Assembly (NCBI GenBank): GCA_002269645.1
Contig: NIVC01001749.1
Location: forward strand, 12,968 to 76,967
DNA from: Macrostomum lignano
Taxonomy: Eukaryota
Length of the DNA stretch: 64,000 nucleotides
Reading direction: 5' to 3'
The translations under genes and the position numbers were made by a program. The notes below the pieces were generated by a model that saw nothing but the letters and a program-made list of their open reading frames with translations, had not been told where the DNA came from and did not search any database. Below are positions 1 to 42,829 of this stretch, one piece after another; within the stretch, counting starts at the first letter, position 1, and each line of letters starts with the position of its first letter.

Positions 1-79
1 GCACCAGGGGCTTTAGCACCAGGGGCTTTAGCACCAGGGGCTTTAGCACCAGGGGCGCCAGCACCAGGGGCGCCAGCAC
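1..79. repeat. 15-bp tandem repeat (GCACCAGGGGCTTTA / GCACCAGGGGCGCCA), truncated by window edge
   Basis: About 5 adjacent copies read directly from the sequence. Confidence 0.9.
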
Positions 80-99
80 CATCCGGGGCGCCGGCGTCA

Positions 100-335: not shown

Positions 336-756
336 ATATGTACACCTGTTGCGAATCCCTCTAGTTTCGCTGATTAAGACCGGACAGTGGGCAAGCCTCA
401 ACTGCTGGACATCCTCAGCTAGTCTCTCAAGCATTCAGTCAATCACCCTGAACTGCGGAGTCACAGTAGAGAGAGAAACGGGGGTTAGAGAAGGCGATCG
501 ATAATTTTATTGCACCCGCACACCACCGTCCTTGTTGAACTGTATTTTTTGTTTTGTATATTTACGTTTGAAAATTCTGAATAGCTCATATTTCACTACA
601 GCTGTATAAAGTTGCTTGTATTAATAGCTGTTTGTTATGTAAAAAAGCAACAGTGTTTCATAAAGCTGAATAATTGTTCTATAATACCAACAACAGCAAA
701 ACACATGAGTCCAATAAACGTTCAGTGTAGTTTTGATTGCTCATTTTGCGTCACAT

Positions 757-1068
757 TCAGTGCTTGTGATCCGAGTGATGGTGCCCCTGGTGACCAGGCT
801 CGTGCTGATGATGGCCGTGACCGCCCTCGCCGTGCTGATGATGATGATGCTGCTTGCCAGCCTCCGACTGACAGCAGTCGTTTTTCTGGCAGCAATCGCC
901 GGAGTTGCAATCGCTAGGCGGGCATTTGCACTTTTCGCCGCACAATTCGGCCGAATGCTTCTGCTGAGTGTCGCCGCATGGCTGGCAGGATTTGTGCTCG
1001 GCTTTGCGTGTCGAGGTGGCGCGGTGAATGTACATGTACATTCTATGTTCTAGGAAGGCTATGTACAT
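757..1068 (-). CDS. Small Cys/His-rich metallothionein-like protein (5' end and start codon uncertain)
   Basis: ORF contains CQPCGD...CGEKCKCPPSDCNSGDCCQKNDCCQ (10 Cys), then a tail with 15 His in 31 aa. TGA at 757-759; AATAAA on the minus strand at 506-511. Confidence 0.6.
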   Translation of the reverse strand: MYIAFLEHRMYMYIHRATSTRKAEHKSCQPCGDTQQKHSAELCGEKCKCPPSDCNSGDCCQKNDCCQSEAGKQHHHHQHGEGGHGHHQHEPGHQGHHHSDHKH

Positions 1069-1090
1069 TCGTTCATTTGCTGCGATGTCT

Positions 1091-1385
1091 ATTTCTCCAA
1101 CCCTCTAACCCCGCCTACCTGCGTACATTTCTCCAACCCTCTAACCCAGCCTAGCTTGCGAGCATTTATCTAGCCCTCTAACCCCGCCTAGCCTGCGTAA
1201 ATTTCTCCAAACCCTCTAACCCCGCCTAGCCTGCGTAAATTTCTCCAAACCCCCTAACCCCGCCTAGCCTGCGTACATTTCTCCAACCCTCTAACCCAGC
1301 CTAGCCTGCGTACATTTATCTAGCCCTCTAACCCAGCTTAGCCTGCGTACATTTATCTAGCCTCTATCCCCGCCTAGCCTGCGTA
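1091..1385. repeat. Minisatellite, 36-38-bp unit (ATTTCTCCAACCCTCTAACCCCGCCTAGCCTGCGTAC)
   Basis: About 8 tandem copies with two variants. Confidence 0.9.
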
Positions 1386-2096
1386 ATTCTAGCGTAAGTA
1401 AACTACTGTACACTCTCTAATTCGTGTACATTCTGCTAGATAATGCCTAACATCAGTACTTTCATCGACTCTATGTTGTACACTGTTGCTCTCCGTCTTC
1501 AATACGCCATCAATACGGCTGATCAAATGCCATTTAAAATCGAAACAAGAGTGGATAAATATTACTTACACATCTTCACGGAGACTTGTTGAAACAATAA
1601 TAGATAGCCCGAAGATTTGAATTCGAGAGCTCGAGAATTCGATCTTATAGATGCATGGCAGTCGTTTTCTGATATCCTTGATCGCTTTTATAGACAAGGG
1701 TATTGAATTTTAATTGGTCAAAACACGCCACGGAAGATTTCCCAATTTTGGGTTTAGGAAAACAGTGCTCATTCGTCGCTCCCATATTCGTATAAGTCCA
1801 GTGAGCACTTGCTTCCCATCTATATGCTCCACCATGCATCTGGGAGGAATAGGGTTGAGCTGATACAGATGGCGCATTCGAAAAATTCAGCGAAAAACCA
1901 ACTGAAGAGAAGACCAGAGAGTGAGGGATCCCAGTTTTGTGAAGCGCATTTAGCAGCTAAAACATGCACATGCATAGCTCGTAGAGGCAGTCTGATATGG
2001 GCGATGCATGATATTGCGAATGCGCTGCTTTTTATCTCAATGCACAGTTGGACAACCACCATTAAGTATGCATTCACTCCTGACCTTAGATGGTAT

Positions 2097-2158
2097 GATG
2101 TCTATCTATCTATCTACCTATCTATCTACCTATCTATCTATCCATCTATCTATCCATC

Positions 2159-2206
<48 letters not shown>

Positions 2207-2259
2207 CATCTATCTATCCATCTATCTATCTATCTATCTATCTATTTATCTATCTATCC

Positions 2260-2317
<58 letters not shown>

Positions 2318-2411
2318 CTATTTATCTATCTACCTATCTATCTATCTATCTATCCATCTATCTATCCCTATCTATCTATCTATCTATCCATCTATCTATC
2401 TATCTTTCTCC

Positions 2412-2460
<49 letters not shown>

Positions 2461-2508
2461 CATCTATCCATCTATCTATCTATCTATCTACCTATCTATC
2501 TATCTGTC
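2097..2508. repeat. (TATC)n microsatellite
   Basis: About 400 bp of TATC with TTTA/TCCA/TACC interruptions. Confidence 0.97.
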
Positions 2509-2869
2509 TAGTGTATGGAAATACATCGAAATGTATATAAAAATCTAAAAAGTCTGCTCACACTGAACTCAGAATTTGAAGTCACACTCTCCCACTCTAC
2601 AATTCGATGCCATAGACGCCCCGGCCTCGAATCGTACGATTCGAAAACAGAAGCCGAAAGTTTATTAGGCTGGATATTAAGACGAAAGTCCAGAGGAAAA
2701 AGTGGACGAAGTACAATTCGTACTACGTACATGTAAAAGTTTTCTTAATTTATATGCAAAACTGCATGACAACCTTAGAAATGAAATTTTTTGACACATG
2801 CGTAAATAAAAAAATCTATTGGGAAATCAATCATGTTGGCCTTGTCATCAGACAGAAGTCTACGCTCGT

Positions 2870-3299
2870 ATGACTCAATGTGCCAAGCAGACAGATGAAC
2901 AACTCTAGCTCACGGATAGTCTATGACTCAATCTGCCAAGCAAACGATGAACAACTCTAGGTCACGGATAGTCAATGACTCAATCTGCCTAGCAAACGAT
3001 GAACAACTCTAGGTCACGGATAGTCAATGACTCAATCTGCCTAGCAAACGATGAACAACTCTAGGTCACGGATAGTCTATGACTCAATCTGCCAAGCAGA
3101 CAGATGAACAACTCTAGCTCACGGATAGTCTATGACTCAATCTGCCAAGCAAACAGATGAACAACTCTAGCTCACGGATAGTCTATGACTCAATCTGCCA
3201 AGCAAACGATGAACAACTCTAGGTCACGGATAGTCAATGACTCAATCTGCCTAGCAGACAGATGAACAGCTCTTAGCTCACGGATAGTTTATGACTCAA
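2870..3299. repeat. Minisatellite, 52-53-bp unit (TATGACTCAATCTGCCAAGCAAACGATGAACAACTCTAGGTCACGGATAGTC)
   Basis: About 8 tandem copies. Confidence 0.93.
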
Positions 3300-4159: not shown

Positions 4160-7100
4160 CTACTTAGGCCGCTGACTGTACTTGTGCCGTATGGTTGTCT
4201 CGAGTTCAGCCAGTTGCTGTTCGTCGAGGGCCTCATTGAAGTTGTCGATGCTAGCTAGGATCTCCGGGTTGCTTTGGAATTCGTAGTACCTGGTTTGTTG
4301 GTCACAGGTAGTTGGTTAAGTTCGCGAGTTCGTGCATAATATAAAGATATACAGATCCAAAAATGGCGGGTAACCTTGGAGCTAAATGGTTGAACACTGA
4401 ACAGATTGATCTGCCATTCAGGCGGTCCCAAGTTCGAATCCCAGAAGAGGCGAAATACAATAATTATGGGGCAGATTGTTATTTATGAGTTCGTATATAA
4501 AAGATAAGCTACGGGACGAGATTTAGCCCAGTGGTGTAACGAGAGATTCTGTTAACCGGTAGGTCGCAGGTTCGAATCCCGGTACAGGCAAAATATTTTC
4601 TAGAGTTAATAATGATTACATAGTTTGCACATAAAATGCCGAAAAATTACTATAAGTCACGTGACGAGATTTAGCCCAGTGGTGTAACGAGCGATTCTGT
4701 TAACCCGTAGGTCGCAGGTTCGAATCCCGGTACAGGCAAAACAATTTTCTAGATTATTTACTACGACATGACAAACATCTCAAATCTCTAATCATAATCT
4801 CTAATTTCGACGGTCACGGGTTCGAATCCTAACAGCAGCTTGAGTTATTTCTTAGGCACATACTGTTAAAATCACTTACATAGAATTGGCCGAGTAGCGC
4901 TTGAATTTGATGCAAAAGTCCAAGCAGTTATAGGACATCCAGTACTTCCAATAGTTGATCACTGGCCCAACAGCCCGTGCCCGCTCCACCGGATAACTGG
5001 CCGGCAATTGTCGGATCTCGTCGTTGCCAATGACGCCCTCGTGAATTCTGGTCAGATATTTCAGCACCTCGCCAACGTGAGGCACCAGCGGTGGCTCCGT
5101 AGTGCTCATATTGCGAAAGTATTCCCGCGCAAATGCGGACTGGTTGGCCAGCTTGCTAGTGAAGTCCTTCAGCTTGCGGCGAACTGAGCGGCCTGCGGTT
5201 GAGTGGGGTGTACTTTTATTTATTGCAAATTGCTACTACTGACACATCACTTATTAGTATCTCACCAGGCCACGGCAGGCGATCCAGGCTAACCAGACAC
5301 AGCACAATAGCCAGGTGAGAATTGAAATTGTGATGCCGCCGCAGCTCTTCGGCCACTTTGCAGAAGAAGCTCATGAAGCGCTGCCGGTCGCGCATTCGAT
5401 CGGCTGGCCGGCCCAGCACCAGCGTCTTCGCCCAGAAGCCGAGGCGATTGAAAAAGTTTATAAACGCCTGCAGATTAACAAACTGTTCCCCGGATCTGGC
5501 GCGCACGAAGGCCAGGTACTCCTGGGGGATCGGGGATTACAGAGGGGATTAACACTGTATTCTGTGGATTAACTCACTGTATTCTGGGGATTAACTCACT
5601 GTATTCTGGGGATTAAAACACTGTATTCTGGGGATTAACTCACTGTATTCTGGGGATTAACTCACTGTATTCTGGGGATTAACTCACTGTATTCTGGGGA
5701 TTAACTCACTGTATTCTGGGGATTAACACACTGTATTCTGGGGATTAACACACTGTATTCTGGGGATTAACACGCTGTATTCTGGGGATTAACTCACTGT
5801 ATTCTGGGGATTAACACACTGTATTCTGGGGATTAACACACTGTATTCTGGGGATTAACACACTGTATTCTGGGGATTAACTCACTGTATTCTGGGGATT
5901 AACACACTGTATTCTGGGGATTAACTCACTGTATTCTGGGAATTAACACGCTGTATTCTGGGGATTAACTCACTGTATTCTGGGGATTAACACACTGTAT
6001 TCTGGGGATTAACACACTGTATTCTGGGGATTAACACGCTGTATTCTGGGGATTAACACACTGTATTCTGGGGATTAACACGCTGTATTCTGGGGATTAA
6101 CTCACTGTATTCTGGGGATTAACTCACTGTATTCTGGGAATTAACTCACTGTATTCTGGGGATTAACTCACTGTATTCTGGGGATTAACTCATTGTATTC
6201 TGGGGATTAACTCACTGTATTCTGGGGATTAACACGCTGTATTCTGGGGATTAACACACTGTATTCTGGGGATTAACACACTGTATTCTGGGGATTAACT
6301 CATTGTATTCTGGGGATTAACTCACTGTATTCTGGGGATTAACACGCTGTATTCTGGGGATTAACACACTGTATTCTGGGGATTAACACACTGTATTCTG
6401 GGGATTAACTCACTGTATTCTGGGGATTAACACGCTGTATTCTGGGGATTAACACACTGTATTCTGGGGATTAACACGCTGTATTCTGGGGATTAACTCA
6501 CTGTATTCTGGGGATTAACACACTGTATCATGGGGATTAACACGCTGTATTCTGGGGATTAACACACTGTATTCTGGGGATTAACACGCTGTATTCTGGG
6601 GATTAACTCACTGTATTCTGGAGATTAACACACTGTATCATGGGGATTAACACACTGTATTCTGGGGATTAACACACTGTATTCTGGGGATTAACACACT
6701 GTATTCTGGGGATTAACACACTGGAATCTGGGGACTAACACACTGTATTCTGGGGATTAACACACTGTATCCTGGGGATTAACTCACTGTATTCTGGGAG
6801 ATTACCGCACTGTATTGTAGGGATTAAAACTACATTTATGGGATTAAGGCACTATAACCTTAGGTTTAACACACCTGGACTCTACTCTTGGGAGTAGAGC
6901 AATCTCACCTGAATATCGATTCTCCTATACAACCTGGCATCCATCAAGGTGATTTGCTCGGCCACCTGTCTGGGACTGAATTCCACTATGTTGCGTCGTT
7001 TTATCGACAAAGAGGACGACAACGACAGAGTGGATTTTGCTTTTTCGCTCTCTTCTTCGTCTCGCTGCTGCTGCTGCTGAATGCGAAGGCAGTGCAGAGC

Positions 7101-10100
7101 GCTGCCGAGGATCTGCACTTCGGCCAGATTACCGTCCGCTAGGAGACGCTCTTTGAGTTTAGCCAGCTGCTCCATCAATGGCGAGCAGGAGGCTGAGTCG
7201 GAGCCGGTGCTGGATGAGTTCAATCGATTCTCCCGGTCCTGCTGGGTCGATTCGTCCAACACGCGGATTAGGAAAGCAAAAGCCGACTTCCACAGGGTGT
7301 CCTTGTTGGCCTGGGTCTGGGGTTTGATATTATTAGAGCGTTATAAATGGATTGCTAATCTATCCAATACACACACTGGTGCAGGAATAGAATGGATTGC
7401 TTATCTATCCAATACACAGTGATGCAGGGATAGAATGGATTGCTAATCTATCAAATACACACATTGATGAAGAAATAGAATGGATTGCCAATCCATTTCT
7501 AGCCAATATCACACTGATGCAGGAATAGAATGGATTGCTAATCCATTGCTAAGCCAATATCACACTGATGAAGGATTAGAATGGATTGCTAATCTAGCCA
7601 ATACACACTGATGAAGAAATAGAATGGATTGCTAATCCATTGCTAAGCCAATATCACACTGATGGAGGAATAGAATGGATTTCTAATCCATTTCTAGCCA
7701 ATATCACACTGATGCAGGAATAGAATGGATTGCTAATCCATTGCTAAGCCAATATCACACTGATGAAGGAATAGAATGGATTGCTAATCCATTGCTAAGC
7801 CAATATCACACTGATGAAGGAATAGAATGGATTGCTAATCTAGCCAATATCACACTGATGAAGGATTAGAATGGATTGCTAATCTAGCCAATACACACTG
7901 ATGAAGAAATAGAATGGATTGCTAATCCATTGCTAAGCCAATATCACACTGATGGAGGAATAGAATGGATTTCTAATCCATTTCTAGCCAATATCACACT
8001 GATGCAGGAATAGAATGGATTGCTAATCCATTGCTAAGCCAATATCACACTGATGCAGGAATAGAATGGATTGCTAATCTATTGAAACTCACCTTAAAGT
8101 GCAGGCACCGTTCCACAATCTTGGCCAGCAGCTCGGCAGGCTTAGCAAAGCAGGGGAAAGTGGCGGCGAAACTCTCGCAGAACAGAATATGGGGCCGGTC
8201 GTTGCCAGGCAGACAGGCATAGACTAGCAATGCGTCCAATGGTCCGCCTCGAACTAGAATGCAATCGTCTCCAGACGTATTACTATTAGTAGCATTAGCG
8301 GTACTGTTGGCATTGTCCCAGACTAGCAAATCGCTGAGATCTTCCTGGCAATGAGGCGGCAGCTGCGCAGCGGTGGCAGCAGCGACCGATTCATTTGATG
8401 ATGCAGCCGGCTGCTGAGCGGCTTGTTGCTGAGGCTGCCTAACAGTCCTGCTGACTGTGGCGCTGCGCTGTACATACAGACCCGGCTGCAGTTCGCGCTG
8501 TTCAGACACCAGGCAGACGGTCTTGGTTCGTTCGCCGTTAACCAACGGCGTGTCGGCTTCGGGATCGTCTGGCTCGGCTGCCGACAGCAGCTGACGCCAC
8601 CTGGCTCGGCACAGATCAAAGGATTCAATGGCCGAATGCCGGCTGAAGTCGATTGTCATCAGGTCGTCGCGATCAAAGCTGCCGCCGCTGCTTCTGCCGC
8701 TACTGTCGCCGAGTGCTTGCATGTACTGGGTAACTGCGGTGTGGGTTTACGGGAGGGAACTTGTGCTGTAGAACTCAACAATTGTTTGGTACCTAGTAGT
8801 TTCCTGTCTAGATATCAAGTTTCGAGCTCCATGGCTGAGCGAGCTTAGGTTCTCCATCCAGATTTTAAGTTTAGAGCTTCATTGTTGAGCGAGCTTAGAA
8901 GGTTTCTTCATCCAGATTTTAAGTTTAGAGCTTCATTGTTGAGCGAGCTTAGAAGGTTTCTTCATCCAGATTTCAAGTTTAGAGCTCTAATGGTTGGGCG
9001 AGCTTAGAAGTTTTGTCTATCTAGATTTCAAGTTTAGAGCCCTATGGTTGGGCGAGCTTAGAAGTTTTCTCTATCTAGATTTCATGTTTAGAGCCCTATG
9101 GTTGGGCGAGCTTAGAAGTTTTGTCTATCTAGATTTCAAGTTTAGAGCCCTATGGTTGGGCGAGCTTAGAAGTTTTGTCTATCTAGATTTCAAGTTTAGA
9201 GCCCTATGGTTGGGCGAGCTTAGAAGTTTTCTCTATCTAGATTTCAAGTTTAGAGCCCTATGGTTGGGCGAGCTTAGACGTTTTCTCTATCTAGATTTCA
9301 AGTTTAGAGCTCCATGGTTGGGCGAGCTACAATTTTCCTCTATCTAGATTTCAAGTTTAGAGCTCCATGGTTGGGCGAGCTACAAGTTTCCTCTATCCAG
9401 ATTTCAAGTTTAGAGCTCCATGCTTGAGCGAGCTACAATTTTCCTCTATCCAGATTTTATGTTTAGAGCTCCATGCTTGAGCGAGCTACAATTTTCCTCT
9501 ATCCAGATTTTATGTTTAGAGCTCCATGCTTGAGCGAGCTACAATTTTCCTCTATCCAGATTTCAAGTTTAGAGCTCCATGCTTGAGCGAGCTACAATTT
9601 TCCTCTATCCAGATTTCAAGTTTAGAGCTCCATGCTTGAGCGAGCTACAAGTTTCCTCTATCCAGATTTTATGTTTAGAGATTCATGGTTAAGCGAGCTA
9701 GAAGGTTCCTCTATCCAGATTTTATGTTTAGAGATTCATGGTTAAGCGAGCTAGAAGGTTCCTCTATCCAGATTTTATGTTTAGAGATTCATGGTTAAGC
9801 GAGCTAGAAGGTTCCTCTATCCAGATTTTATGTTTAGAGATTCATGGTTAAGCGAGCTAGAAGGTTCCTCTATCCAGATTTTATGTTTAGAGATTCATGG
9901 TTAAGCGAGCTAGAAGGTTCCTCTATCCAGATTTTATGTTTAGAGATTCATGGTTAAGCGAGCTACAAGTTTTCTCTATCCAGATTTTAAGTTTAGAGCT
10001 CCATGCTTGAGCGAGCTACAAGTTTCCTCTATCCAGATTTCATGCTTAGAGATCCATGGTTGAGCGAGGAAGAAGTTTCCGACCTTTACGAGTAACAATT

Positions 10101-13100: not shown

Positions 13101-16100
13101 TGCAGTGACACAATATTCTCACTCTGATCCGATGCAGTGACACAATATTCTCACTCTGATCCGATGAAGTGACACAATATTCTCACTCTGATCCGATGCA
13201 GTGACACAATATTCTCACTCTGATCCGATGCAGTGACACAATATTGGCGCTTTAGTACGATGCAGTGAAACAATATTCTCACTCTGATCCGATACAGTGA
13301 CACAATACTCTCACTCTGATCCGATGCAGTGACACAATATTCTCACTCTGATCCGATGCAGTGACACAATATTGGCGCTTTAGTACGATGCAGTGAAACA
13401 ATATTCTCACTCTGATCCGATACAGTGACACAATACTCTCACTCTGATCTGATGCAGTGACACAATATTCTCACTCTGATCCGATGAAGTGACACAATAT
13501 TCTCACTCTGATCCGTTACAGTGACACAATATTCTCCCTTTAGTTCGATGCAGTGACACAATATTCTCACTCTGATCCGATACAGTGACACAATATTCTC
13601 ACTCTGATCCGATGCAGTGACACAATATTCTCACTTTAGTTCGATGTAGTGACACAATATTCTCATTCATCCGATGTAGAGACACTTCTCTAGACACTCT
13701 TAAGCAACGTACAGACACGATAATCTCACTGTGATCCAAAATTGAGATAGCGATAGTAGTATAATGTCTGTAGATAAAATATAGGACATTGCCCGATGCT
13801 ACATAGCAGCCGGCAATCTCTACTGCAATGCTGCTATGATTAACGACACGCACAAGCATAGCAAATCATATTATGAGGGAAGTATTATGCAATGTGCGTA
13901 TTGAGCAGTTAGTGGCCTCGACTGAGTACAAAACACTACAAAGTACAAGAGATCGAGCAGAAAAAGTAGAGAAATTTTGTTCTCATATTTAACCGCACGC
14001 AATAAATCAATATTTGGGATCGGATAGGGGGCATTTTTATAACGAATAAACTCGCTCTTTTTCCATCACTTCTTCTTGAGCATATTTGAGCATATATAAG
14101 CACGAACACAGTTCACCTTCTGAAAGAGCCATCTAGCCAGTCAGTCAGGCAGGTTTAACTTCCAGATCAGGCCACTTAACTCATAAGTCAAAGTGGATTT
14201 TTTTCTTGAAAAATAAGCAGGCAGCCCGCCAAGCAGAACGATATGAAATATTAATCTGGTCAAAGCTAAGCGATAAAAGTCACGCTTCAGCAGTATTGAT
14301 GAAAATTCTGCTATTTTATTAAGGATTTGGGAGCCATTTATTTTTCAAAAAGGCTCGAGACAAAGGAATTATAAGGAACTCCATCATTTTGCTAGTTGCC
14401 AAGCTAAACCCAGGTTTTCGAAAAAATTCCGAACCTTTAGTTGAGTCGCGGAAATCTCACTCCAGATGAAGCTTAAGACACGGAAATCTAACCCCCTAGA
14501 TCCAATGCAGAGCCATGGAAATCTCACTTTAGATCCATAGCAGAGACAAGGAAATCTCACCCTAGATCCATAGCAGAGACAAGGAAATCTCACCCTAGAT
14601 CCATAGCAGAGACAAGAAAATCTCACCCTAGATCCATAGCAGAGACACGGAAATCTCACCCTAGATCTAATGAATAGGCACGGAAATTCCATCCTAGATC
14701 CAATGGATGGACACGGAAATCTCACCCTTGACCCAATTAATAGACACGGAAATCCCATCCTAGATCCAATGGATGGACAAAGAAATCTCACCATAGATCC
14801 AACGCAGAGACACTGAAATCTCACCCTAGACCTATAGCAGAGACAAAGAAATCTCACCCTAGACCCAACACAGAGATACGGAAATCTGACCCTAGATCAA
14901 ATGCAGAGATACGGAAATCTCACCCTAGATCAAATGCAGAGACACGGAAATCTCACCCTAGATCAAATGCAGAGACACGGAAATCTCACCCTAGACCCAA
15001 TTAATAGACACGGAAATCCCATCCTAGATCCAATGGATGGACACGGAAATCTCACCCTAGATCCAACGCAGAGACACTGAAATCTCACCCTAGACCTATA
15101 GCAGAGACAAAGAAATCTCACCCTAGACACAACACAGAGATACGGAAATCTCACCCTAGACCTATAGCAGAGACAAAGAAATCTCACCATAGATCCAACG
15201 CAGAGACACTGAAATCTCACCCTAGACCTATAGCAGAGACAAAGAAATCTCACCCTAGACACAACACAGAGATACGGAAATCTCACCCTAGATCAAATGC
15301 AGAGACACGGAAAATATCAAATAGACACAAAACCATACTTTAAAGTTTCAGAAAAGATATTACATTACTTAGACTATTTAGCAACGGAAAATGTATTAGC
15401 GTAATTGAGAAAATTTCTCAGACCAAAGGTCGGAATCAGGCGCAATTACGTAAACAGGCATAAACTAAACTCAGAACTGACAGCGCAAATTACGAGAAAC
15501 CAGATTCATTTCGTAGAGCTACTTTAGTAAAAAAGGGTAATGGATGGAGACAGATATACAGATAGCATATGGTAACTGGCAGAATCAGCCATGGCAGTAG
15601 GAAATGCGGCATGACTGAATGCGGTCAGATATAAACAGGTCAGTGGCAATATTTTCACATAACTTTTAACTCCGAAGCGCATTGGTTTATTAATAATTTT
15701 ATAGTTTTGTGTCACAGGTCTATCTATATCTTGGGCTCTTGGTATCATATAATTCAATTATAATAAAACTGAAGCCTTTATTTATTTTAATGCGTTTCCG
15801 GCACTTATTTTCCATTGGTGAGCCACTCTATAAAATGAGATTCTGCAATTCTTATTGAGGCTTCGGGGGAGATTCTCAGTGAGGGTTCAGGGGCGATTCT
15901 CAGTGAGGGTTCAGGGGCGATTCTTAGTGAGGGTTCAGGGGCGATTCTTAGTGAGGGTTCAGGGGCGATTCTTAGTGAGGCTTCGGGGCAATTCTTAGTG
16001 AGGGTTCAGGGGCGATTCTCAGTGAGGCGTCAGGGGCGATTCTTAGTGAGGGTTCAGGGGCGATTCTTAGTGAGGGCTTGGGGGCGATTGTTAGTGAGGG

Positions 16101-19100
16101 TTCAGGGGCGATTCTCAGTGAGGCGTCAGGGGCGATTCTTAGTGAGGCTTCGGAGGAGATTCTCAGTGAGGGTTCAGGGGCGATTCTTAGTGAGGCTTCG
16201 GGGCGATTGTTAGTGAGGGTTCAGGGGCGATTCTCAGTGAGGCGTCAGGGGCGATTCTTAGTGAGGCTTCAGATGCGATTCTCAGTGAGGCGTCAGGGGC
16301 GATTGTTAGTGAGGGTTCAGATGCGATTCTTAGTGAGGCTTCATGGGCGATTCTTAGTGAGGCTTCATGGGCGATTCTTAGTGAGGCTTCGGGAGAGATT
16401 CTCAGTGAGGGTTCAGGGGCAATTCTCAGTGAGGGCTTGGGGGCGATTTTTAGTGAGGCTTCAGGGGCGATTCTTAGTGAGGCTTCGGGGGAGATTCTCA
16501 GTGAGGGTTCAGGGGCGATTCTCAGTGAGGCGTCAGGGGCGATTGTTAGTGAGGGTTCAGATGCGATTCTTAGTGAGGCTTCATGGGCGATTCTTAGTGA
16601 GGGTTCAGATGCGATTCTTAGTGAGGCTTCATGGGCGATTGTTAGTGAGGGTTCAGATGCGATTCTTAGTGAGGCTTCAGATGCGATTCTTAGTGAGGCT
16701 TCATGGGCGATTGTTAGTGAGGGTTCAGATGCGATTCTTAGTGAGGCTTCAGATGCGATTCTTAGTGAGGCTTCATGGGCGATTGTTAGTGAGGCTTCAT
16801 GGGCGATTCTTAATGAAGGTTCAGGGGCGATTTTCAGTAAGGGTTCAGGGGCGATTTGAGTGAGGGTAGAGTGAATGGGACGACGAGAAATTACCCAATG
16901 AAGTGCTCAACAATCAAGCTTACAGACACAACTCACCCAATCGAATCTGGTCATTGGCCGCAGTCTCAGGCCGTCTTAGCATAACACCTGATCCAGCATC
17001 AGTACCGTCTTCATCAGTTTTATTAGCTGATTTGTTAAGTCTGGGAGGCAGTGGAGGGGGCGGCGGTGACTCCTGATGGTCAGGAGCAGCAGATGTCGCA
17101 GCCACGGTCACCACGGGCGGTTCAGCCGACGACACCACAGTTCGAGTTCGCACAACTTTCTGACGCCGTCTTCTCAATATTCGACGCTTATAAAGTACAC
17201 CGTCTACTTTAACGAACTCTTCGGTGACTTCCTCTTCAGTCTGAGTCGAGTCCTCCGATCGATTGTTTAATTCAGCTTCATCGTCGCCTTTGTCGTTGGG
17301 GGCGATGGCCAAGGTGGAGGACGCGTTAGCAACCAGAGATGAGGCTCCGGAGGAAGAAGACGAATCAGACGAAGCGGCCGAAGACGCAGGAGAGGAAGAC
17401 CGAAGCAATCGGCTAGTGTTTGCCGGCGCCGCGCAAGCAGACTCAGAGTCAGAGGGCTCCATAAAAACCAGAGTGGATCTCAGCTGACTACCGGCGGCGT
17501 CAACAAGTTCGTTCACTTTGTTTTCGTCTTCCGATTCAGATCCGGCGACGTGCAGTCCTTCGAGCTCCGAAGGCAGCGAGCTGCGCAGCCGTTCGCGACT
17601 GAAAATCGACGGGGATGCGGCGAGGTGTTTGCCTGGCTGGAATATAAAACTCGAAATCCCCTATTCGAATTCCAAAATCTTCAAATCTTTCGAAATATTC
17701 AAATTTACATATTTAATCCCGAAAATCCTTATCTGGAATCCCAAAATCCCCATCTGAAATCCCCGAAATCCCTATCTGGAATCCCGACATCCTTATCTGA
17801 AATCCCGAAATCCCTATCTGGAATCCCGACATCCCCATCTGGAATCCCGAAATCCTTATCTGGAATCCCGAAATCCTTATCTGGAATCCCGATCCCGAAA
17901 TCCCTATCTGGAATCCCGACATCCCTATCTGGAATCCTAAAGTGCCCCATCTGGAATCCCGACATCTCTATCTGGAATCCCGACATCCCCACCTGGAACC
18001 GCGAAAACCCCACCTGGAATCCCGAAATCCCCATCTGGAATCCCGAAATCCCACCTGGAATACCGAAATCCCTATCTGGAATCCCGAAATCCCTATCTGG
18101 AATCCCGAAATCCCTATCTGGAATCCCGACATCCCCATCTGAAATCCCTAAATCCTCATCTGGAATCCCGAAATCCCCATCTGGAATCCCGAAATCCCCA
18201 TCTGGAATACCTAAATCCCCATCTGGAATCCCGAAATCCCCATCTGGAATACCGAAATCCCAATCTGGCATCCCGAAATCTCCATCCCCAATAGCCATAC
18301 CTGTGAGTTTCAACTCTCGGTGACCGGCAGGCGTCAATGATGCTCTGAAATTAATTGGCAATAGGTAAGCGGGTAACTGATACTGTATATCCTATATACG
18401 TAACTGAAAAAATGAAGGAATTACGGAAATAGCTTGGGATCAGCAGGTACAGCCAAGGTAATCCTGACCAATTCACTTCTTGGCAGCCGTTTTCCGATCG
18501 CCTCTATCGTATTTGTTCAATGACTGAAGCTGTGCACGATACAGTCTGTCTTTACTTCCTTGCCGCATGGCTGCTTGTCCCCCAATATTTTTATTGCTAA
18601 GCCAGTTCGAAGCCTCTCCCCTCTCCCAATCCTCATCCCCAAGCATCCAGACCCCCCACCCAAGAAAGCCTAACAAAGTGTGGAGAGTTGTTCGTTTCCC
18701 CCTCAAGCCGACCCTTCAGCAGCGCGCTTGCCCGTGCACAGCCAATAGACCGACTGCACCAATCCAAGCTGGCAACTGCACAGCGGCCAGATGTTGAGAG
18801 AGAGAGAGGGGGGGAATGCGAAGAAAAAATGCCCATAAAGGACTTTGGCCGATCCTGCATTTTCAGACACGTGTTTCGTACACGCTTCAAAAGAGAAAGG
18901 AATGTGAGCTTTGCTAAAGGAGAAAATTACACTGGTTCTGAGAAATGACGACACTAATGAGTAACCGGTAACTAGGCATTTACTAATATGGCCAATTTAT
19001 TACGCGTAAATACGACGGTTAGATTAATAGGACAGATAAGGTAGGTGTCAGCGGAGAAGGGGTGGCGGAGAGGGGGTAGTGGGATAGAGGTTAGTGAGAT

Positions 19101-22100
19101 TGGGGGTAGCGGGTAGGGGTAACGGTAGGGGTAGTGAGACTAGGGGTAGTTTGATAGGGGGCAGCGGGTAGGGGGTAGCGGGATAGGGGTAGTGAGTCTA
19201 GGGGTAGTGAGATAGGGGGTAGTGGTTTAGGGGGTAGCGGGATAGGGGTAGTGAGATAGGGGGTAGTGGGTAGCGGGTAGCGGGATAGGGGTAGTGAGTC
19301 TAGGGGTAGTGAGATAGGGGGCAGCGGGTAGGGGGTAGCGGGATAGGGGTAGTGAGTCTAGGGGTAGTGAGATAGGGGGTAGTGGTTTAGGGGGTAGCGG
19401 GATAGGGGTAGTGAGATAGGGGGTAGTGGGTAGCGGGTAGCGGGATAGGGGTAGTGAGTCTAGGGTAGTGAGATAGGGGGCAGCGGGTAGGGGGTAGCGG
19501 GATAGGGGTAGTGAGTCTAGGGGTAGTGAGATAGGGGGTAGTGGTTTAGGGGGTAGCGGGATAGGGGTAGTGAGATAGGGGGTAGTGGGTAGCGGGTAGC
19601 GGGATAGGGGTAGTGAGTCTAGGGGTAGTGAGATAGGGGGCAGCGGGTAGGGGGTAGCGGGATAGGGGTAGTGAGTCTAGGGGTAGTGAGATAGGGGGTA
19701 GTGGTTTAGGGGGTAGCGGGATAGGGGTAGTGAGATAGGGGGTAGTGGGTAGCGGGTAGCGGGATAGGGGTAGTGAGTCTAGGGTAGTGAGATAGGGGGT
19801 AGTGGGTAGGGGTAGCGGGATAGGGGTAGTGAGTCTAGGGGTAGTGAGATAGGGGGTAGTGGTTTAGGGGGTAGCGGGATAGGGGTAGTGAGATAGGGGG
19901 TAGTGGTTTAGGGGGTAGTGAGATAGGGGGTAGTGGGTAGGGGGTAGCGGGATAGGGGTAGTGAGTCTAGGGGTAGTGAGATAGGGGGTAGTGGGTAGGG
20001 GGTAGCGGGATAGGGGTAGTGAGTCTAGGGGTAGTTGGATAGGGGGGTAGCGGGTAGGGGGAAGTGGGATAGGGGGTAGTGGGATAGGGGTAGAGAGATA
20101 GGGGGTAGTGGGTAGGGGGTAGCGGGATAGGGGTAGTGAGTCTAGGGGTAGTTGGATAGGGGGTAGTTGGATAGGGGGTAGCGGGATAGGGGTAGTGAGA
20201 TAGGGGGTAGTGGGTAGGGGGTAGCGGGATAGGGGTAGTGAGATAGGGGGTAGTGGGTAGGGGGTAGCGGGATAGGGGTAGTGAGTCTAGGGGTAGTTGG
20301 ATAGGGGGTAGCGGGTAGGGGGAAGTGGGATAGGGGGTAGTGGGATAGGGGTAGAGAGATAGGGGGTAGTAGGTAGGGGGTAGTGGGATAGGGGTAGTGA
20401 GTCTAGGGGTAGTTGGATAGGGGGGTAGCGGGTAGGGGGAAGTGGGATAGGGGGTAGTGGGATAGGGGTAGAGAGATAGGGGGTAGTGGGTAGGGGGTAG
20501 TGGGATAGGGGGTAGCGGTGCCCACTGAGAGACCGATAAAAAATCAAATTGACCGATTAACAAAAGCGACAAATTTTTAAAACAACAAGCGCTACGAGTA
20601 CACAGATAATAATATCCGAATAAAAGCTACTTCGTTATGAGTGAATATTAATTATGGTTGCAGACTGCACCTACTATCCTTAGCTACAAAAACATAATAA
20701 AATAAGGACCTAAGGTATAAGCAATTTAAAAAACAGGGATTACGAGAATAAAGAAATAATAAATATATTCTAAAACTGACAACAAATTAAAATAAGAAAC
20801 AGTGAATCAATATGAAATTATAATTCTTACCAACAGTCGCCGTTAGAGAAATCTTAAAAGCTTCTCTGGAGAGAGAAAAAATGATATTCGCAATTCAAGA
20901 CCCGTTTAATTAACCTATATACACTGTGCAGCGCAGATAGATGCTAGTCAGCCGGAGGTAGTCAGGCTAGTTGGGTTCATGAAATTCATACACACGCGTA
21001 AACAGCAGAAACGATCTACGCAATTAAAAGTAAACATTGGTCTATCTAAGAAACGATGCCAAGAAAGCTCCAACACTTGACTTATTTGACCCGATAGTTC
21101 AGTAGCAACGCCAACGCCTCCCCCGCTTGAGCTTAAGTCCCGGGTTCGATTCCCTCACTTTTGTGTGTAGTGGAAAGACGGACAAAGCCTATGGTAACTT
21201 GCGAATTTGCAGAGCCTTTGGTAAAACAATTAGAGGAGGCATCACTGATGGCCTGCAACACAGGCTTGCATAAATGTGCAACACTAATAACTAAGTACTA
21301 ACAAGATGACGAGGCTTTTGGCCTTAATAATACAGTTATAGTTACTCCTGCCGTATACCCAAAATTATGTTAATTTTGTTTAGGCAAGTCTTATTTAGGT
21401 CGCCATTACACAATATAAATATTCACGTTCAAAGGCATCATCTCCCAACTAGCGCTGAGGCAATTCTGCCCATTTCACTGACTCCTGACCACACACAGAG
21501 TGTACAAAGGCCTTCGCAACTTAGGGAGTTGGCCAAGCCCAAATGAATGTGGCTGTGAATGTCACCTTTGTTTTATTCACCAGGATGCCAACCGAAAAAA
21601 ACTACCATTTAAGCGAATTGCGCTTACCGATATTGTCTCGCGATAATCCGCCATTAGTCGAGTCCAATCGTTCAAGCTGTTGTCTTCTAAATCGAATTGA
21701 TCACCAAATCTAACAGCCAGATGGATGCGGCGGTCTAGCGAGGAGCAGAGGCTTGCTAAGCTGGAGTTGGCGGCTAGTAACTGGGACTCGAACTGGCTCG
21801 ACTGCCTGCGTGGGCGGCGGGGAATGAGTTCAGTTACTAGGTTTAGGAACAGTGATGAAACTGGTGGGATTCTTGGGCGACCTAGCCTGAGTATTGGGAG
21901 GCTGGCCCAGCAGCTGAGGATCTGGAAGGCTGGCCTAGCAACCTAAAGATCTGGGAGGCTGGCCCAGCGACTGAGGATCTAAGAGCTGAGAGCTAAGAGC
22001 CCAGCAGCTGAGGATCTGGGAGGCTGGCCTAGCAATCTAAAGATCTGGGAGGCTGGCCTAGCAACCTAAAGATCTGAGAGGCTGGCCCAGCGACTGAGGA

Positions 22101-27045: not shown

Positions 27046-30000
27046 ATGCAAGAATTGGAGGACTCATTCTGCTTAGCTCAGACACTGGGACCACCAACCG
27101 TTCAGCTGCAGTCTGCAGACTCAAGCAATCAAGCTACTGAGCAGCTTGCACCGCAGATTCCGCTCACACTGTGCCAGCGCTTGAAGCTCAGTCTAGATAG
27201 TGGCGAATTCTCCGATGTAGCCTTTCTAATTGGCGATGCTAAAATCCGATTCAATGCTCACCGTGTTGTACTAGCATCTGTCAGTCCAGTGTTCCGAGCT
27301 ATGTTCAATAGCCCATTGAGTCGGCAGCTGCAGAGTCTAGATTCTAATCACAATAGCAAACTTATGACTGAAGCTATCCACGAGCTATCTGATATTGAGT
27401 CCAGCGCCTTTGAGAATCTATTAATATTTGCTTATACAGACTGTACAGAAGGTGTTACCGATAGCAACGTATTTCAAACGCTGTACGCCGCTAAGAAATA
27501 TCTTGTTGATGGTCTTGCTAACGCTTGCTGCGAGTACTTGCGTCAGCATTTAACTGTGGATAATGCGCTTACAGTGCTGGAGCATTGTATGTTTCTACAG
27601 GTGCGAAAAAGTGCAGTGAAAAATTACGCCAGGTCCTGAAACAGCGGAGCACCATCTTTAAATCCTAAAACCTGGCAGCACCAAATTTTAATCCCAAAAT
27701 AAAACAAGGAGGCACCACCTTTCAGATCCTGAGACAGGGATGCACCACCTTTCAGATCCTGAGACAGGGATGCACCACCTTTCAGATCCTGAGACAGGGA
27801 TGCACCACCTTTCAGATCCTGAGACAGGGATGCACCACCTTTCAGATCCTGAGACAGGGATGCACCACCTTTCAGATCCTGAGACAGGGATGCACCACCT
27901 TTCAGATCCTGAGACAGGGATGCACCACCTTTCAGATCCTGAGACAGAGAAGCAGCACCTTCAGATCCTGAAGTATGGAATTTCCATTTATTATGTCAAA
28001 ATAGTGAGTGAAAATCACTTCAGATTCTAAAATTAGGAATAACCACTCTGGATTATAAACAGAGTATTCTATTTAAATCCTAAATAGGAACGAATTGGTT
28101 CACTTTGCATTTATCAATCAATAAATATTTCACTGTCCAGGTGCCTTCAGTTGTGCAACCATGTCTCCGTTTAATTTGTCACCAATGGGAACGAATCAGT
28201 TCGGATCTGCTCGGTTGCCATGGAAACACGTATTCTCAAGATTTGATTGCCTGCGTTCTGTCCCAGGATGGTCTGCCATGCGACGAGGTGGAAATATTTG
28301 ATTGGATTTTATGCTGGGCAAAGTCTCGTAAAAGTGCTAATGCTGATGCTGATGAAGAGGATAAACCGTCTGGTTCAATGTCATCATTGGGGACTGTCGG
28401 GGATTTAATCGATTATACACCGTTGCTACGATGCGTTAGATTTTCAAGAATGTCGCGACGCCAGATTGGCAGTCTAGTGGCGCCTACCGGGCTATTGACT
28501 GATGGACAATTGGTCAGAATTCTGACAGGACAGGACAGGGATAATCTAGGTGAGAGTGTGGCCTTGAATATTTATCTTGATCTCTAGCGGCACTCTGGGT
28601 GCCAGTGCATTGATCTCTAGTGGCACTTTTTGGGCCAGTGTATTGATCTCTAGTGGCACTTTTGTGCCAGTGCATTGATCTCTAGTGGCACTTTTGTGCC
28701 AGTGTATTGATCTCTAGTGGCACTTTTGTGCCAGTGTATTGATCTCTAGTAGCACTTTTGGGCCAGTGTATTGATCTCTAGTGGCACTTTTGGGCCAGTG
28801 TATTGATCTCTAGTGGCACTTTTGCTGTCAGTGCATTGATGTCTAATGGCAATTGATTGCCAGTCTCTTGTTCTCAAATGGCACTTTTAATGCTAGTGTA
28901 TTGATCTCTAATGGCATATTTGATGTATAGTGGCAGCTCAATTTACTATCTCTCACACCTTCAGACCGAGACACCGTCGTTGAATTCAACGCTCAGCCGC
29001 GGTGCCCAAGCCTTCCTGGCGAACCCGAACAGCTGGTTCTGTGCGATCTGGCCGCGGCCGCCGCCGCTGTACGCGCTGCCGCTGCACCCTCCCAGGTGTC
29101 GGCCAGGTTGCCCATGGCCCTGCCGCCGTCAGTGACAGACGAATCGTCTTCGGCGTCCACGTTTGTGTCAGCATCCGGTCTGCTGAGCTTAGGTAATTGG
29201 CCCATTGTAGCTCAGGGTGAGACTGTGTGGTAGTGAGGGGGTAAAAGGAGAGAGTGAAAGAGTGGTTGAAAATGGAGTGAAACTCCGAAAATTTGAGACT
29301 GAGAGAGTGACACTGAGAGTGAGATTGAGTGAGTGACACTGCGAGAGTGAGAGAGTGACACTGTGAGAGTGAGATTGAGAGAGTGACACTGCGAGAGTGA
29401 GAGAGTGACACTGCGAGAGTGAGAGAGTGACACTGTGAGAGTAAGAGAGTGACACTGTGATGGTGAGATTGAGAGAGTGACACTGCGAGAGTGAGAGTGA
29501 CACCGTAAGAGTAAGAGAGTGACACTGTGAGGGTGAGAAAGTGACAATGTGAGAGTGAGAGAGTGACACTGCGAGAGTGAGAGAGTGACACTGTGAGAGT
29601 AAGAGTGACAATGAGAGTGAGAGAGTGACACTATGAGAGTGAGAGAGTGACACTGAGAGTGAGAGAGTGACACTGCGAGAGTGAGAGAGTGACACTGTGA
29701 GAGTGAGATTGAGAGAGTGACACTGCGAGAGTAAGAGTGACAATGAGAGTGAGAGAGTGATACTGTGAGAGTAAGAGAGTGACACTGTGATGGTGAGATT
29801 AAGAGAGTAACACTGCGAGAGTGAGAGTGACACCGTAAGAGTAAGAGAATGACACTGTGAGGGTGAGAAAGTGACACTGTGAGGGTGAGAAAGTGACACT
29901 GTGAGGGTGAGATAGTGACACTGTGAGAGTGAGAGAGTGACACTGCGAGAGTGTGAGAGTGACACTGTGAGAGTGAGAGAGTGACACTGCGGGAGTGAGA

Positions 30001-32712: not shown

Positions 32713-32884
32713 TATCTAAATGATGGTTCCATTTCTAAACTATGCTGCAATAGACGATATTAGTAGTATATATACAAGCTCTACAATCGCACCTCTACGC
32801 GTCTTCCTGTCTCGCCGAAACTACAACGACAGCAGCAGCGGCGGCAGCGGCAGCAACGAAGAGGACAGCAATAATAAAGGCGGA

Positions 32885-35800: not shown

Positions 35801-35955
35801 CCGATACGGCTAATCCGCCTGCGGCTCCTTCGGCTGCTGTTGCCGCTGCGGCTGCCGCAGCTGCCGCGGTTAGCGCTAAACTGCCTCCGCCGCCGGCGCA
35901 GTCTCAGCCACAGCCGCAGTTGCCGCCGGGTTTTAATTTGCGAGGCGGATTTTAA
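32885..35955 (+). CDS. CDK11: Cyclin-dependent kinase 11 (PITSLRE)
   Basis: Exon 1 ends at 34156 (RS/RD-rich N-terminus; IEEGTYGVVYRA; GFPITSLREINTLLK). Exon 2 is 35008-35955 (HRDLKTSNLL, DFGLAREYGSP, VVTLWYR). Phase-0 GT-AG intron. The ORF is open from 32720; MRPPPP at 32885 is the preferred start. Confidence 0.95.
34175..34915. repeat. Intronic minisatellite, 22-24-bp unit (GACTCATCCGCCCCCTTATACT)
   Basis: About 32 copies filling the CDK11 intron. Confidence 0.96.

Positions 35956-42783: not shown

Positions 42784-42829
<46 letters not shown>

What the first reader, a model, noticed from the sequence alone, without database searches (positions are those of the whole stretch)
757..1068. Candidate metallothionein with a His-rich metal-binding tail
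Seen: a ~90-100 aa minus-strand ORF with a Cys cluster (CGEKCKC...SGDCCQKNDCCQSEAGK) fused to a tail with 15 His in 31 residues, a clean stop and a downstream AATAAA. Known: the N-domain of C. elegans MTL-1, as I recall it ([24 protein letters not shown]), has the same C-x3-C-x-C...CC-x3/4-CC spacing. Inference: a two-module Cys(Cd/Cu)/His(Zn/Ni) sequestering peptide of a kind gene finders often miss. I saw no TGCRCNC MRE just upstream.
Basis: partly seen in the sequence, partly recalled or inferred. Interest (0 to 1): 0.7.

Follow-up and report, generated by a model that had tools for sequence, protein, structure and literature searches.

The report
Flatworm orphan Cys/His-rich metallothionein-like gene
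A small two-exon gene of the flatworm Macrostomum lignano encodes an 82-residue peptide with a ten-cysteine cluster and a tail that is half histidine; it looks like a metal-binding (metallothionein-like) protein by composition, but it has no detectable relatives, is already deposited as a "hypothetical protein", and its function is untested.

Summary
The 103-codon minus-strand ORF (757..1068), the Cys cluster, 15 His in the last 31 residues, the TGA stop, a downstream AATAAA and the lack of an upstream MRE are all present. The gene model needs correcting: the first 22 ORF residues are intron. The real CDS is ATG+T (1573..1570), a 568-nt GT..AG intron, then 1001..757, giving 82 aa. This is 100% identical to GenBank PAA64456.1 (BOX15_Mlig034277g1, hypothetical protein, Macrostomum lignano), whose annotation is transcript-derived. 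A second genomic copy (g2) keeps every Cys and His. The peptide meets the compositional criteria for a metallothionein: about 9 kDa, 26% Cys in a 39-residue core, CxC/CC/CxxC motifs, no aromatic residues, no signal peptide, predicted disordered. The claimed kinship with C. elegans MTL-1 is not supported (hhalign probability 14%; shuffle p 0.13-0.27). An exhaustive scan of 1.84 billion proteins found no homologue. With only 4 substitutions between the two copies, 3 of them non-synonymous, protein-level constraint is not shown. My best reading is a lineage-restricted, cytosolic, two-module metal-binding peptide (about 0.5). Rivals are a different function or a young ORF with no selected function. 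Interest is moderate to low, and the gene is directly testable in this model species.

The parts
1685..1692 (-). Candidate TATA box (TATAAAAG), 112-119 nt upstream of the ATG; a CCAAT lies at about 1717..1713
   Evidence: Sequence read and motif scan. Conserved in the g2 copy. The g2 'partial' CDS starts 18-20 nt downstream of it, so the annotated g2 transcript begins just after it. Function as the core promoter is inferred, not shown.
1570..1672 (-). Exon 1: 5'UTR of at least 99 nt (1672..1574), then the start codon ATG (1573..1571) and the first base (T, 1570) of codon 2
   Evidence: The g2 deposited protein reads through 33 codons of 5'UTR before the Met. The ATG T|GTAAGT junction reproduces the deposited 82-aa protein exactly. 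The true 5' end of the g1 transcript is not known.
1002..1569 (-).
853..1001 (-). Exon 2, Cys module: residues 2-51 (S EHKSCQPCGDTQQKHSAELCGEKCKCPPSDCNSGDCCQKNDCCQSEAGK); 10 Cys at residues 7, 10, 22, 26, 28, 33, 38, 39, 44, 45
   Evidence: All 10 Cys are identical in g2. No homologue among 1.84e9 representative proteins.
760..852 (-). Exon 2, His-rich tail: residues 52-82 (QHHHHQHGEGGHGHHQHEPGHQGHHHSDHKH), 15 His in 31 residues, encoded by mixed CAT/CAC codons rather than a simple repeat
   Evidence: no tandem repeat called here. g2 has one extra His and a G->R change.
757..759 (-). Stop codon TGA
506..756 (-). Probable 3'UTR up to the only AATAAA (511..506)
   Evidence: It differs from g2 by 1 mismatch in 257 nt. 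The poly(A) site itself was not seen.

Best explanation
This is a lineage-restricted (orphan) Macrostomum lignano gene for a cytosolic, intrinsically disordered, two-module metal-binding peptide. It is a metallothionein-like protein in the functional and compositional sense, not a member of any known MT sequence family. Proposed mechanism, inferred from MT chemistry: the 39-residue core, with 10 Cys in CxxC, CxxxC, CxC and two CC pairs, folds around soft metal ions (Zn2+/Cd2+, or Cu+) as a single metal-thiolate cluster of roughly three to four divalent ions. The C-terminal 31 residues, with 15 imidazoles in HH, HxH and HHHH runs, add lower-affinity, readily exchangeable sites for borderline ions (Zn2+, Ni2+, Cu2+, Co2+), or cap and tune the cluster as His does in other MTs. 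The peptide would thus buffer or sequester metals in the cytosol. Shown here: the gene structure, the sequence, the composition, the existence of an annotated transcript and of a second genomic copy, and the absence of homologues. Inferred: translation, metal binding, stoichiometry, metal preference and physiological role.
For: The 82-aa two-exon product is identical to deposited PAA64456.1 / A0A267ESM6. That annotation was built only from strand-specific RNA-seq and transcript assemblies with TransDecoder ORFs (PMC5730564), and the g2 entry reads through the 5'UTR as a transcript-derived ORF would. Composition: 10 Cys and 17 His out of 82 residues (33% potential ligands), 25.6% Cys in the 39-aa core, no Phe/Trp/Tyr, and only Met1 and Leu21 aliphatic, so there is no hydrophobic signal peptide. 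AF2 gives pLDDT 58.8 and pTM 0.29, which fits a disordered apo-form. It is the only His-rich stretch in six frames of 64 kb, it directly abuts the Cys cluster, and it is not a tandem repeat. Synonymous codon choice (TGC 9:1, CAG 9:0, GGC 7/10) matches the genes of the window. Every Cys and His is retained in the g2 copy, and exon 2 is a low-divergence island (1.6% CDS, 0.4% 3'UTR) between an intron at 13.6% and flanks at 2-8%. His-modulated MTs and a His-rich MT with a disordered tail are described in the references listed in PMC12779199, and a His-rich Ni-binding protein with CC pairs (Hpn) in PMC5312948.
Against: There is no homology to any MT or other protein: phmmer over 1.84e9 representatives found only the protein itself and a spurious repeat ORF; PDB gave nothing; hhalign against the MTL-1 family gave 14%. 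No experimental or expression data were found: no paper and none of the six supplement sets searched mentions the gene. Between g1 and g2, 3 of 4 CDS substitutions are non-synonymous (dN/dS near 1 on tiny counts). The chance that 3 random replacements miss all 27 Cys/His residues is about 0.3, so protein-level constraint is not demonstrated. The 3'UTR is even more conserved than the CDS, which would also fit a gene-conversion tract. Overall Cys content (12%) is below that of classical MTs. No metal- or stress-responsive promoter element exceeds chance. Antisense frames are also open, and the codon log-likelihood does not separate the frames.
Confidence: 0.5

Rival explanations
1. It is a young, lineage-specific transcribed ORF with no selected protein function (a de novo or orphan gene, or effectively a non-coding transcript). 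Its Cys/His-rich reading frame would then be a by-product of local base composition.
For: No homologue exists in 1.84e9 representative proteins. dN/dS is about 1 between the two genomic copies (3 non-synonymous, 1 synonymous, 1 in-frame indel). Three overlapping frames on both strands are open across the region, and the codon log-likelihood is as high in an antisense frame. Cys-rich stop-free stretches arise at 11 places in this repeat-rich window. The 3'UTR is better conserved than the CDS, so the low divergence of exon 2 need not reflect selection on the protein.
Against: A 10-Cys cluster and a 15-His tail in one frame, next to each other, with no aromatic residues and no tandem repeat, is a very specific composition, and the His stretch is unique in the window. 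The ORF is intact with an identical Cys/His pattern in both copies, while the adjoining intron has accumulated frame-breaking indels. The gene has canonical splice sites, a candidate TATA box and an AATAAA.
Confidence: 0.22
2. It is a real protein whose role is not metal buffering. It might be a small zinc-stabilised adaptor or regulatory protein (the CxxC...CxxxC pairs acting as a structural Zn site), a redox-active thiol protein, or a His-rich pH- or metal-dependent condensate or nuclear protein.
For: C7-x2-C10 and C22-x3-C26 could form one tetrahedral Cys4 site. Overall Cys content (12%) is low for an MT. There is no metal-responsive promoter signature. The gene is absent from the lists of differentially expressed, germline or neoblast genes held as supplement text.
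Against: No zinc-finger or other domain is recognised. AF2 finds no confident fold. The two CC-x4-CC pairs and the CxC motif are typical of thiolate clusters rather than structural zinc sites (established MT chemistry).
Confidence: 0.2
3. It is a secreted, disulfide-rich peptide (antimicrobial, adhesive, eggshell or stylet-hardening material) in which the even number of Cys forms five disulfides and the His tail cross-links through metals.
For: It has ten (an even number of) Cys. His-rich, metal-cross-linked structural proteins exist in other marine invertebrates (general knowledge; a byssal protein with MT-like motifs is mentioned in PMC9382459).
Against: The N-terminus MSEHKSCQPCGDTQQKH is fully hydrophilic, and the only aliphatic residues are Met1 and Leu21, so there is no signal peptide. 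The complete CDS is defined by the transcript-based annotation.
Confidence: 0.05

Closest known systems
Caenorhabditis metallothionein MTL-1 (nematode MT family; orthologues P0004-P0006 retrieved here)
   Same: Small size (72-75 aa against 82 aa). A Cys-rich body containing C-G-[DE]-K-C-x-C and CC-x3/4-CC followed by an acidic SE/EA stretch. A C-terminus containing His. No MRE/MTF-1-type regulation is expected (PMC4427108).
   Different: No detectable homology (hhalign 14%; shuffle p 0.13-0.27; not retrieved by phmmer). MTL-1 has 18-19 Cys in the three orthologues retrieved and only a few His; the candidate has 10 Cys and 17 His. The His part here is a 31-residue module of its own.
Histidine-containing metallothioneins, including the His-rich Pseudomonas MT with a disordered tail (works of Blindauer 2008, Bofill 2009 and Habjanic 2018, as listed in the references of PMC12779199; PMC7387436)
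   Same: A Cys-thiolate cluster domain combined with His ligands and/or a disordered extra tail. The idea that His tunes Zn versus Cd preference and cluster reactivity.
   Different: These are unrelated sequences, from bacteria, plants and nematodes. None that I know of has a tail that is about 50% His. No comparison of sequences was run here, other than the general database searches, which returned nothing.
Helicobacter pylori Hpn, a histidine-rich Ni-binding storage protein (PMC5312948)
   Same: A small, cytosolic protein with no stable fold, containing His runs (HHHH, HxH) together with CC pairs. The presumed role is storage or buffering of borderline metals.
   Different: Hpn is bacterial, its His dominates throughout and it has only a few Cys; here a distinct 10-Cys module precedes the tail. 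There is no sequence relationship (nothing retrieved). The Hpn composition is from my own knowledge and was not checked here.
Mammalian MT beta-domain (M(II)3Cys9 cluster)
   Same: A similar number of Cys (9 against 10) in a similar length (about 30-40 residues), with CxC and CxxC motifs and no aromatic residues. This is the basis for the proposed 3-4 M(II) stoichiometry (established MT chemistry).
   Different: No sequence similarity: no PDB metallothionein chain matched at E<=10. The candidate is a single module rather than beta plus alpha. It has CC doublets and a His tail.

Membership tests
Metallothionein (operational definition: Kagi / Binz-Kagi criteria) | Low molecular mass (under about 10 kDa) | tested here: met
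   82 residues.
Metallothionein (operational definition) | High Cys content (about 15-30%) arranged as CxC, CC and CxxC motifs | tested here: inconclusive
   12.2% Cys overall but 25.6% in the 39-residue core. CxxC, CxxxC, CxC and two CC pairs are present. The criterion is met for the module but not for the whole chain.
Metallothionein (operational definition) | No or very few aromatic residues; little secondary structure in the apo-form | tested here: met
   No F/W/Y. AF2 pLDDT 58.8 and pTM 0.29; this was a single-sequence prediction, so it is weak evidence.
Metallothionein (operational definition) | High metal content bound in metal-thiolate clusters | not testable with these tools
   Requires recombinant or native protein with ESI-MS/ICP and CD/UV or NMR spectroscopy.
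Metallothionein (operational definition) | Expression responds to metals, or loss alters metal tolerance | not testable with these tools
   No expression data were found. No MRE is present, but that element is not expected to be required outside insects and vertebrates (PMC4427108).
Nematode metallothionein family (MTL-1/MTL-2) | Detectable sequence homology to family members | tested here: not met
   hhalign probability 14% over 20 columns. Smith-Waterman against three genuine MTL-1 orthologues falls within composition-preserving shuffles (p 0.13-0.27). Not retrieved by exhaustive phmmer.
Nematode metallothionein family (MTL-1/MTL-2) | Conserved Cys pattern of the family (18-19 Cys in the retrieved orthologues) | tested here: not met
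   The candidate has 10 Cys. Only a sub-pattern (C-x3-C-x-C and CC-x3/4-CC) is shared, and it recurs in 2-6% of shuffles.
Any Pfam / NCBIfam / PDB-represented metallothionein family | Profile or sequence match | tested here: inconclusive
   There is no match. However, the positive control failed: near-exact MTL-1 and MTL-2 sequences also matched no Pfam model in this copy, so the Pfam negative carries no weight. No PDB metallothionein chain matched at E<=10.
Secreted Cys-rich peptides | N-terminal hydrophobic signal peptide | tested here: not met
   The N-terminus MSEHKSCQPCGDTQQKH has no hydrophobic stretch. This was judged by eye; no dedicated predictor was available.

The most novel reading that the evidence does not exclude
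This is the first metallothionein-type gene of the phylum Platyhelminthes. Parasitic members of the phylum are reported to lack MT genes and to rely on phytochelatin synthase (PMC3561135). On this reading the gene arose independently in the Macrostomum lineage as a new MT family, fusing one thiolate-cluster module to a half-histidine tail that handles borderline metals (Zn/Ni/Cu(II)). It would be a natural Cys/His 'dual-chemistry' metal buffer.
Probability: 0.35. Interest if true: 0.55.

Novelty: new variant of a known kind. Interest (0 to 1): 0.38.

Why it matters
Metallothioneins are polyphyletic, and they are poorly found by homology. My own control showed this: near-exact nematode MT sequences hit no Pfam model. 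For flatworms the open literature I could search names no MT gene, and it states that parasitic species appear to lack them. A validated MT-like gene in M. lignano would fill that gap. It would also give a molecular biomarker to a species promoted as a marine ecotoxicology model (PMC11641670), which is reported there to die at copper above 10 uM and at cadmium above 330 uM. It would add a natural example of a thiolate cluster fused to a long poly-His-like tail, which bears on how MTs tune Zn/Cd/Cu/Ni selectivity. M. lignano has transgenesis (PMC5730564), and as far as I know RNAi as well, so the hypothesis is directly testable. If it fails, the locus is simply an orphan hypothetical protein.

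Tried and rejected
(1) Pfam, NCBIfam and PDB sequence searches found nothing. The Pfam negative is void because the MTL-1/MTL-2 controls also failed.
(2) The word-indexed search of 5.8e9 proteins found only the protein itself. Exhaustive phmmer of the Cys module over 1.84e9 representatives found the protein itself plus P0003, which I rejected as a junk repeat ORF whose 'RCSTPPSDANS' unit recurs six times.
(3) I tested homology to MTL-1 three ways: BLASTP, Smith-Waterman with shuffles against my recalled sequences and against genuine orthologues, and hhalign. All were non-significant. My recalled C. elegans MTL-1 turned out not to be exact, so I replaced it with database orthologues.
(4) g1/g2 divergence as a test of selection was uninformative at the protein level: there are too few changes, and the 3'UTR is even more conserved than the CDS.
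(5) The codon-usage log-likelihood did not discriminate between frames or strands.
(6) The AF2 model had low confidence, so I ran no fold search.
(7) Promoter motif scans (MRE, ARE, CRE, HSE, GATA, AP-1) found nothing above chance. The 5'UTR fold was no better than shuffles (z = +1.16).
(8) Literature: no paper mentions Mlig034277, and it is absent from the text-held supplements of four M. lignano papers; two further papers have no supplements held as text. A string search for the MTL-1 motif in papers found nothing.
(9) tblastn of the peptide against the window found no second copy in the 64 kb.
(10) I did not try other Macrostomum species, because no collection available here holds flatworm transcriptomes or genomes other than the deposited M. 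lignano proteins.

Full report
WHAT IS IN THE SEQUENCE. The window is eukaryotic DNA rich in micro- and minisatellites, and it carries exon fragments of ordinary metazoan genes: a protein kinase, a BTB protein, a MIF4G protein and a RhoGEF. The ORF listing gives 757..1068 on the minus strand, 103 aa, with the quoted Cys cluster and His tail. The last 31 residues contain exactly 15 His. The stop is TGA at 759..757. The only AATAAA downstream lies at 511..506, 249 nt after the stop. No TGCRCNC occurs in the 527 nt upstream of the ATG, and the 64-kb window has 28 such sites against 43.6 expected, so there is no enrichment anywhere.

CORRECTED GENE MODEL. Reading the minus strand, I noticed ATG T|GTAAGT at 1573..1564, and an AAAG| acceptor at 1005..1002 that keeps the frame. 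Joining them gives an 82-residue product: MSEHKSCQPCGDTQQKHSAELCGEKCKCPPSDCNSGDCCQKNDCCQSEAGKQHHHHQHGEGGHGHHQHEPGHQGHHHSDHKH. A search of 5.8 billion proteins returned one hit. It is 100% identical over 100% of its 82 residues: PAA64456.1 / UniRef A0A267ESM6, 'hypothetical protein BOX15_Mlig034277g1' of Macrostomum lignano. From the record coordinates and the position match, I worked out that the window is the last 64 kb (12968..76967) of contig NIVC01001749.1 of assembly GCA_002269645.1. In the second genomic copy this very stretch carries a 19-bp deletion and a 2-bp insertion. The intron is 568 nt, has canonical GT..AG only in the minus orientation, and contains a 37-bp x 8 minisatellite. 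A candidate TATA box (TATAAAAG, 1692..1685) and a CCAAT lie upstream.

IS IT TRANSCRIBED? I could not see reads. However, the Mlig_3_7 annotation was produced only from strand-specific RNA-seq (StringTie), a de novo transcriptome, TACO/TBONE and TransDecoder (PMC5730564). A deposited spliced CDS on this strand therefore implies a spliced transcript. The second copy's entry (PAA84756.1, g2, 'partial', 116 aa) reads through 33 codons of 5'UTR before the Met. That is what a transcript-derived ORF without an upstream stop looks like, and it puts the transcript's 5' end 18-20 nt after the TATA box.

THE SECOND COPY AND CONSTRAINT. g2 lies on another contig (NIVC01000363.1). The DV1 assembly is known to be highly redundant because of extra chromosomes (PMC5730564). 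Divergence between g1 and g2, by region, is:
- promoter: 4.9%
- 5'UTR: 5.9%
- intron: 13.6%, plus 58 gap columns
- exon 2 CDS: 1.6%
- 3'UTR: 0.4%
- flanks beyond: 2-8%
Exon 2 is therefore a low-divergence island. But the CDS changes are three non-synonymous substitutions (E3D, Q8K, G64R), one synonymous substitution and one added His codon, and the 3'UTR is even better conserved than the CDS. This pattern fits a gene-conversion tract, or constraint on the mRNA, as well as it fits constraint on the protein. All 10 Cys and all 17 His are retained, yet three random replacements would miss these 27 residues about 30% of the time.

WHAT THE PEPTIDE LOOKS LIKE. It has 82 residues, including 10 Cys (positions 7, 10, 22, 26, 28, 33, 38, 39, 44, 45) and 17 His. 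One residue in three is a potential metal ligand. Cys makes up 25.6% of the 39-residue core, arranged as CxxC, CxxxC, CxC, Cx4C and two CC pairs four residues apart. There is no Phe, Trp or Tyr. The only aliphatic residues are Met1 and Leu21, so there is no signal peptide or membrane segment. AF2, run on the single sequence, gives pLDDT 58.8 and pTM 0.29, meaning no confident fold. Synonymous codon choice (TGC, CAG, GGC) matches the window's genes, but a codon log-likelihood does not separate the frames. The His stretch is the only one of its kind in all six frames of the window. Cys-rich stop-free stretches occur at 11 places, and the candidate itself is not in a tandem repeat.

IS IT RELATED TO ANYTHING? 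No. Exhaustive phmmer of the Cys module against 1.84 billion representative proteins found only the protein itself and a 1,067-aa junk repeat ORF that matches a recurring 'RCSTPPSDANS' unit. Pfam, NCBIfam and PDB gave nothing. They also hit no Pfam model, so the Pfam negative says nothing about MT membership. My recalled MTL-1 was not exact, but it retrieved genuine orthologues from C. briggsae, C. remanei and C. japonica. Even so, three tests fail to support kinship:
- hhalign of the two Macrostomum copies against these three gives 14% probability over 20 columns.
- Local-alignment scores lie inside composition-preserving shuffles: p 0.13-0.27 for the Cys module, and 0.14-0.48 for module-preserving shuffles of the whole protein.
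- The two shared spacing motifs co-occur in 1.9-5.6% of shuffles of the candidate's own residues.
The MTL-1 resemblance is what two Cys/Lys/Glu-rich peptides give by composition. It is a lead on function, not evidence of family membership.

REGULATION. The 527 nt upstream hold no MRE, CRE or HSE. They hold one ARE-like and two GATA matches, which is about what chance gives. g2 has a single TGCGCCC where g1 has TGCGCCA. The absence of MREs is weak evidence either way. Most non-insect invertebrates lack MTF-1, C. elegans mtl genes depend on GATA/ELT-2 for cell-specific expression, and an earthworm MT may use a CRE (PMC4427108). The 5'UTR, with its repeated TCGAATTC, does not fold better than shuffles.

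BEST EXPLANATION. I commit to a lineage-restricted cytosolic metal-binding peptide that is metallothionein-like by the operational criteria (small, Cys-clustered, free of aromatic residues, unstructured) and has two chemically distinct modules. By analogy with M(II)3Cys9 and M(II)4Cys11 clusters (established MT chemistry), the 10-Cys module should enclose about three to four Zn/Cd ions, or more Cu(I). The half-His tail should provide exchangeable sites for Zn, Ni, Cu(II) or Co, or cap and tune the cluster. Precedents are His-containing MTs and a His-rich bacterial MT with a disordered tail (references listed in PMC12779199; PMC7387436), and the His-rich Ni-binding Hpn (PMC5312948). My confidence is about 0.5. 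Everything beyond sequence, gene structure and annotation is inference.

RIVALS. The alternatives I considered are:
- A young transcribed ORF with no selected protein function (about 0.22). In favour: it is an orphan, dN/dS is about 1, and all frames are open.
- A real protein with another role, such as a structural Zn site, redox function or a nuclear His-rich protein (about 0.2).
- A secreted disulfide-rich peptide (about 0.05), disfavoured by the fully hydrophilic N-terminus.

KNOWN OR NEW? The gene and protein are already deposited, unnamed. No paper in the searchable library mentions the gene or any M. lignano metallothionein. [quoted passage not shown] If metal binding is confirmed, this would be a new MT-type family in a phylum where none is characterised, with an unusually long His module: a new variant of a known kind. 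For now it remains a well-formed hypothesis resting on composition.

VERDICT.

Noticed in passing
window 2101..2510: A (TCTA)n = (GATA)n microsatellite of about 102 units lies about 410 nt upstream of the candidate TATA box. In gene orientation it reads GATA repeats. Its length differs greatly in the g2 copy. A similar array lies near 48.6-48.9 kb, so it is probably just a common microsatellite, although GATA factors drive mtl genes in C. elegans (PMC4427108).
   Followed up: partly
window 1091..1385: A 37-bp x 8 minisatellite (86% matches) sits inside the gene's only intron. It is also present in g2, with different unit variants.
   Followed up: partly
window 374..1001: Exon 2, the 3'UTR and about 130 nt beyond the AATAAA form a roughly 1%-divergence island between the two genomic copies, flanked by 7-18% divergence. 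The 3'UTR (1 mismatch in 257 nt) is better conserved than the CDS. This could be a gene-conversion tract or constraint on the 3'UTR; it is unresolved.
   Followed up: partly
window 612..1053 (+ strand): Two antisense ORFs (612..917, 101 aa; 733..1053, 106 aa) overlap the CDS. They stay open because of the composition of the Cys/His-coding sequence, and one scores as well as the sense frame in a codon log-likelihood. They have no splice or promoter support and are probably not genes.
   Followed up: partly
window 1620..1650 (- strand, 5'UTR): There is a duplicated TCGAATTC around a CTCGAG (TCGAATTCTCGAGCTCTCGAATTC). The predicted RNA structure of the 5'UTR is no more stable than shuffles (z = +1.16).
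   Followed up: yes
L002 (g2 copy), about 204 nt upstream of its annotated CDS start; equivalent to window ~1877: g2 carries one consensus MRE core (TGCGCCC) where g1 has TGCGCCA. A single 7-mer like this is expected by chance about 0.3 times per 527 nt.
   Followed up: partly
window ~4160..8722 (- strand): The upstream neighbour on the same strand is a 955-aa RasGEF-domain gene, according to the called genes of locus L001. Whether the small gene shares a transcriptional unit with it (M. lignano has polycistronic, trans-spliced precursor transcripts) was not examined.
   Followed up: no
window 32720..35955 (+), 38680..48402 (-), 27046..28587 (+), 55749..56764 (-): Exon-sized ORFs of ordinary genes: a protein kinase with a long Arg/Ser/Glu-rich N-terminus, which I read as CDK11-like (only the Pkinase domain was matched), a MIF4G-domain protein that looks eIF4G-like with polyQ, a BTB/POZ protein and a RhoGEF.
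   Followed up: partly
window 1..81, 2869..3299, 5544..6000, 14384..20572, 28986..29965, 46672..47293, 50777..51331, 57983..62882: The density of minisatellites is very high (units of 15, 52 and 22 bp, and many more). They create long spurious ORFs in several frames, including Cys-rich ones, which is a caution for any ORF-based reading of this genome.
   Followed up: partly
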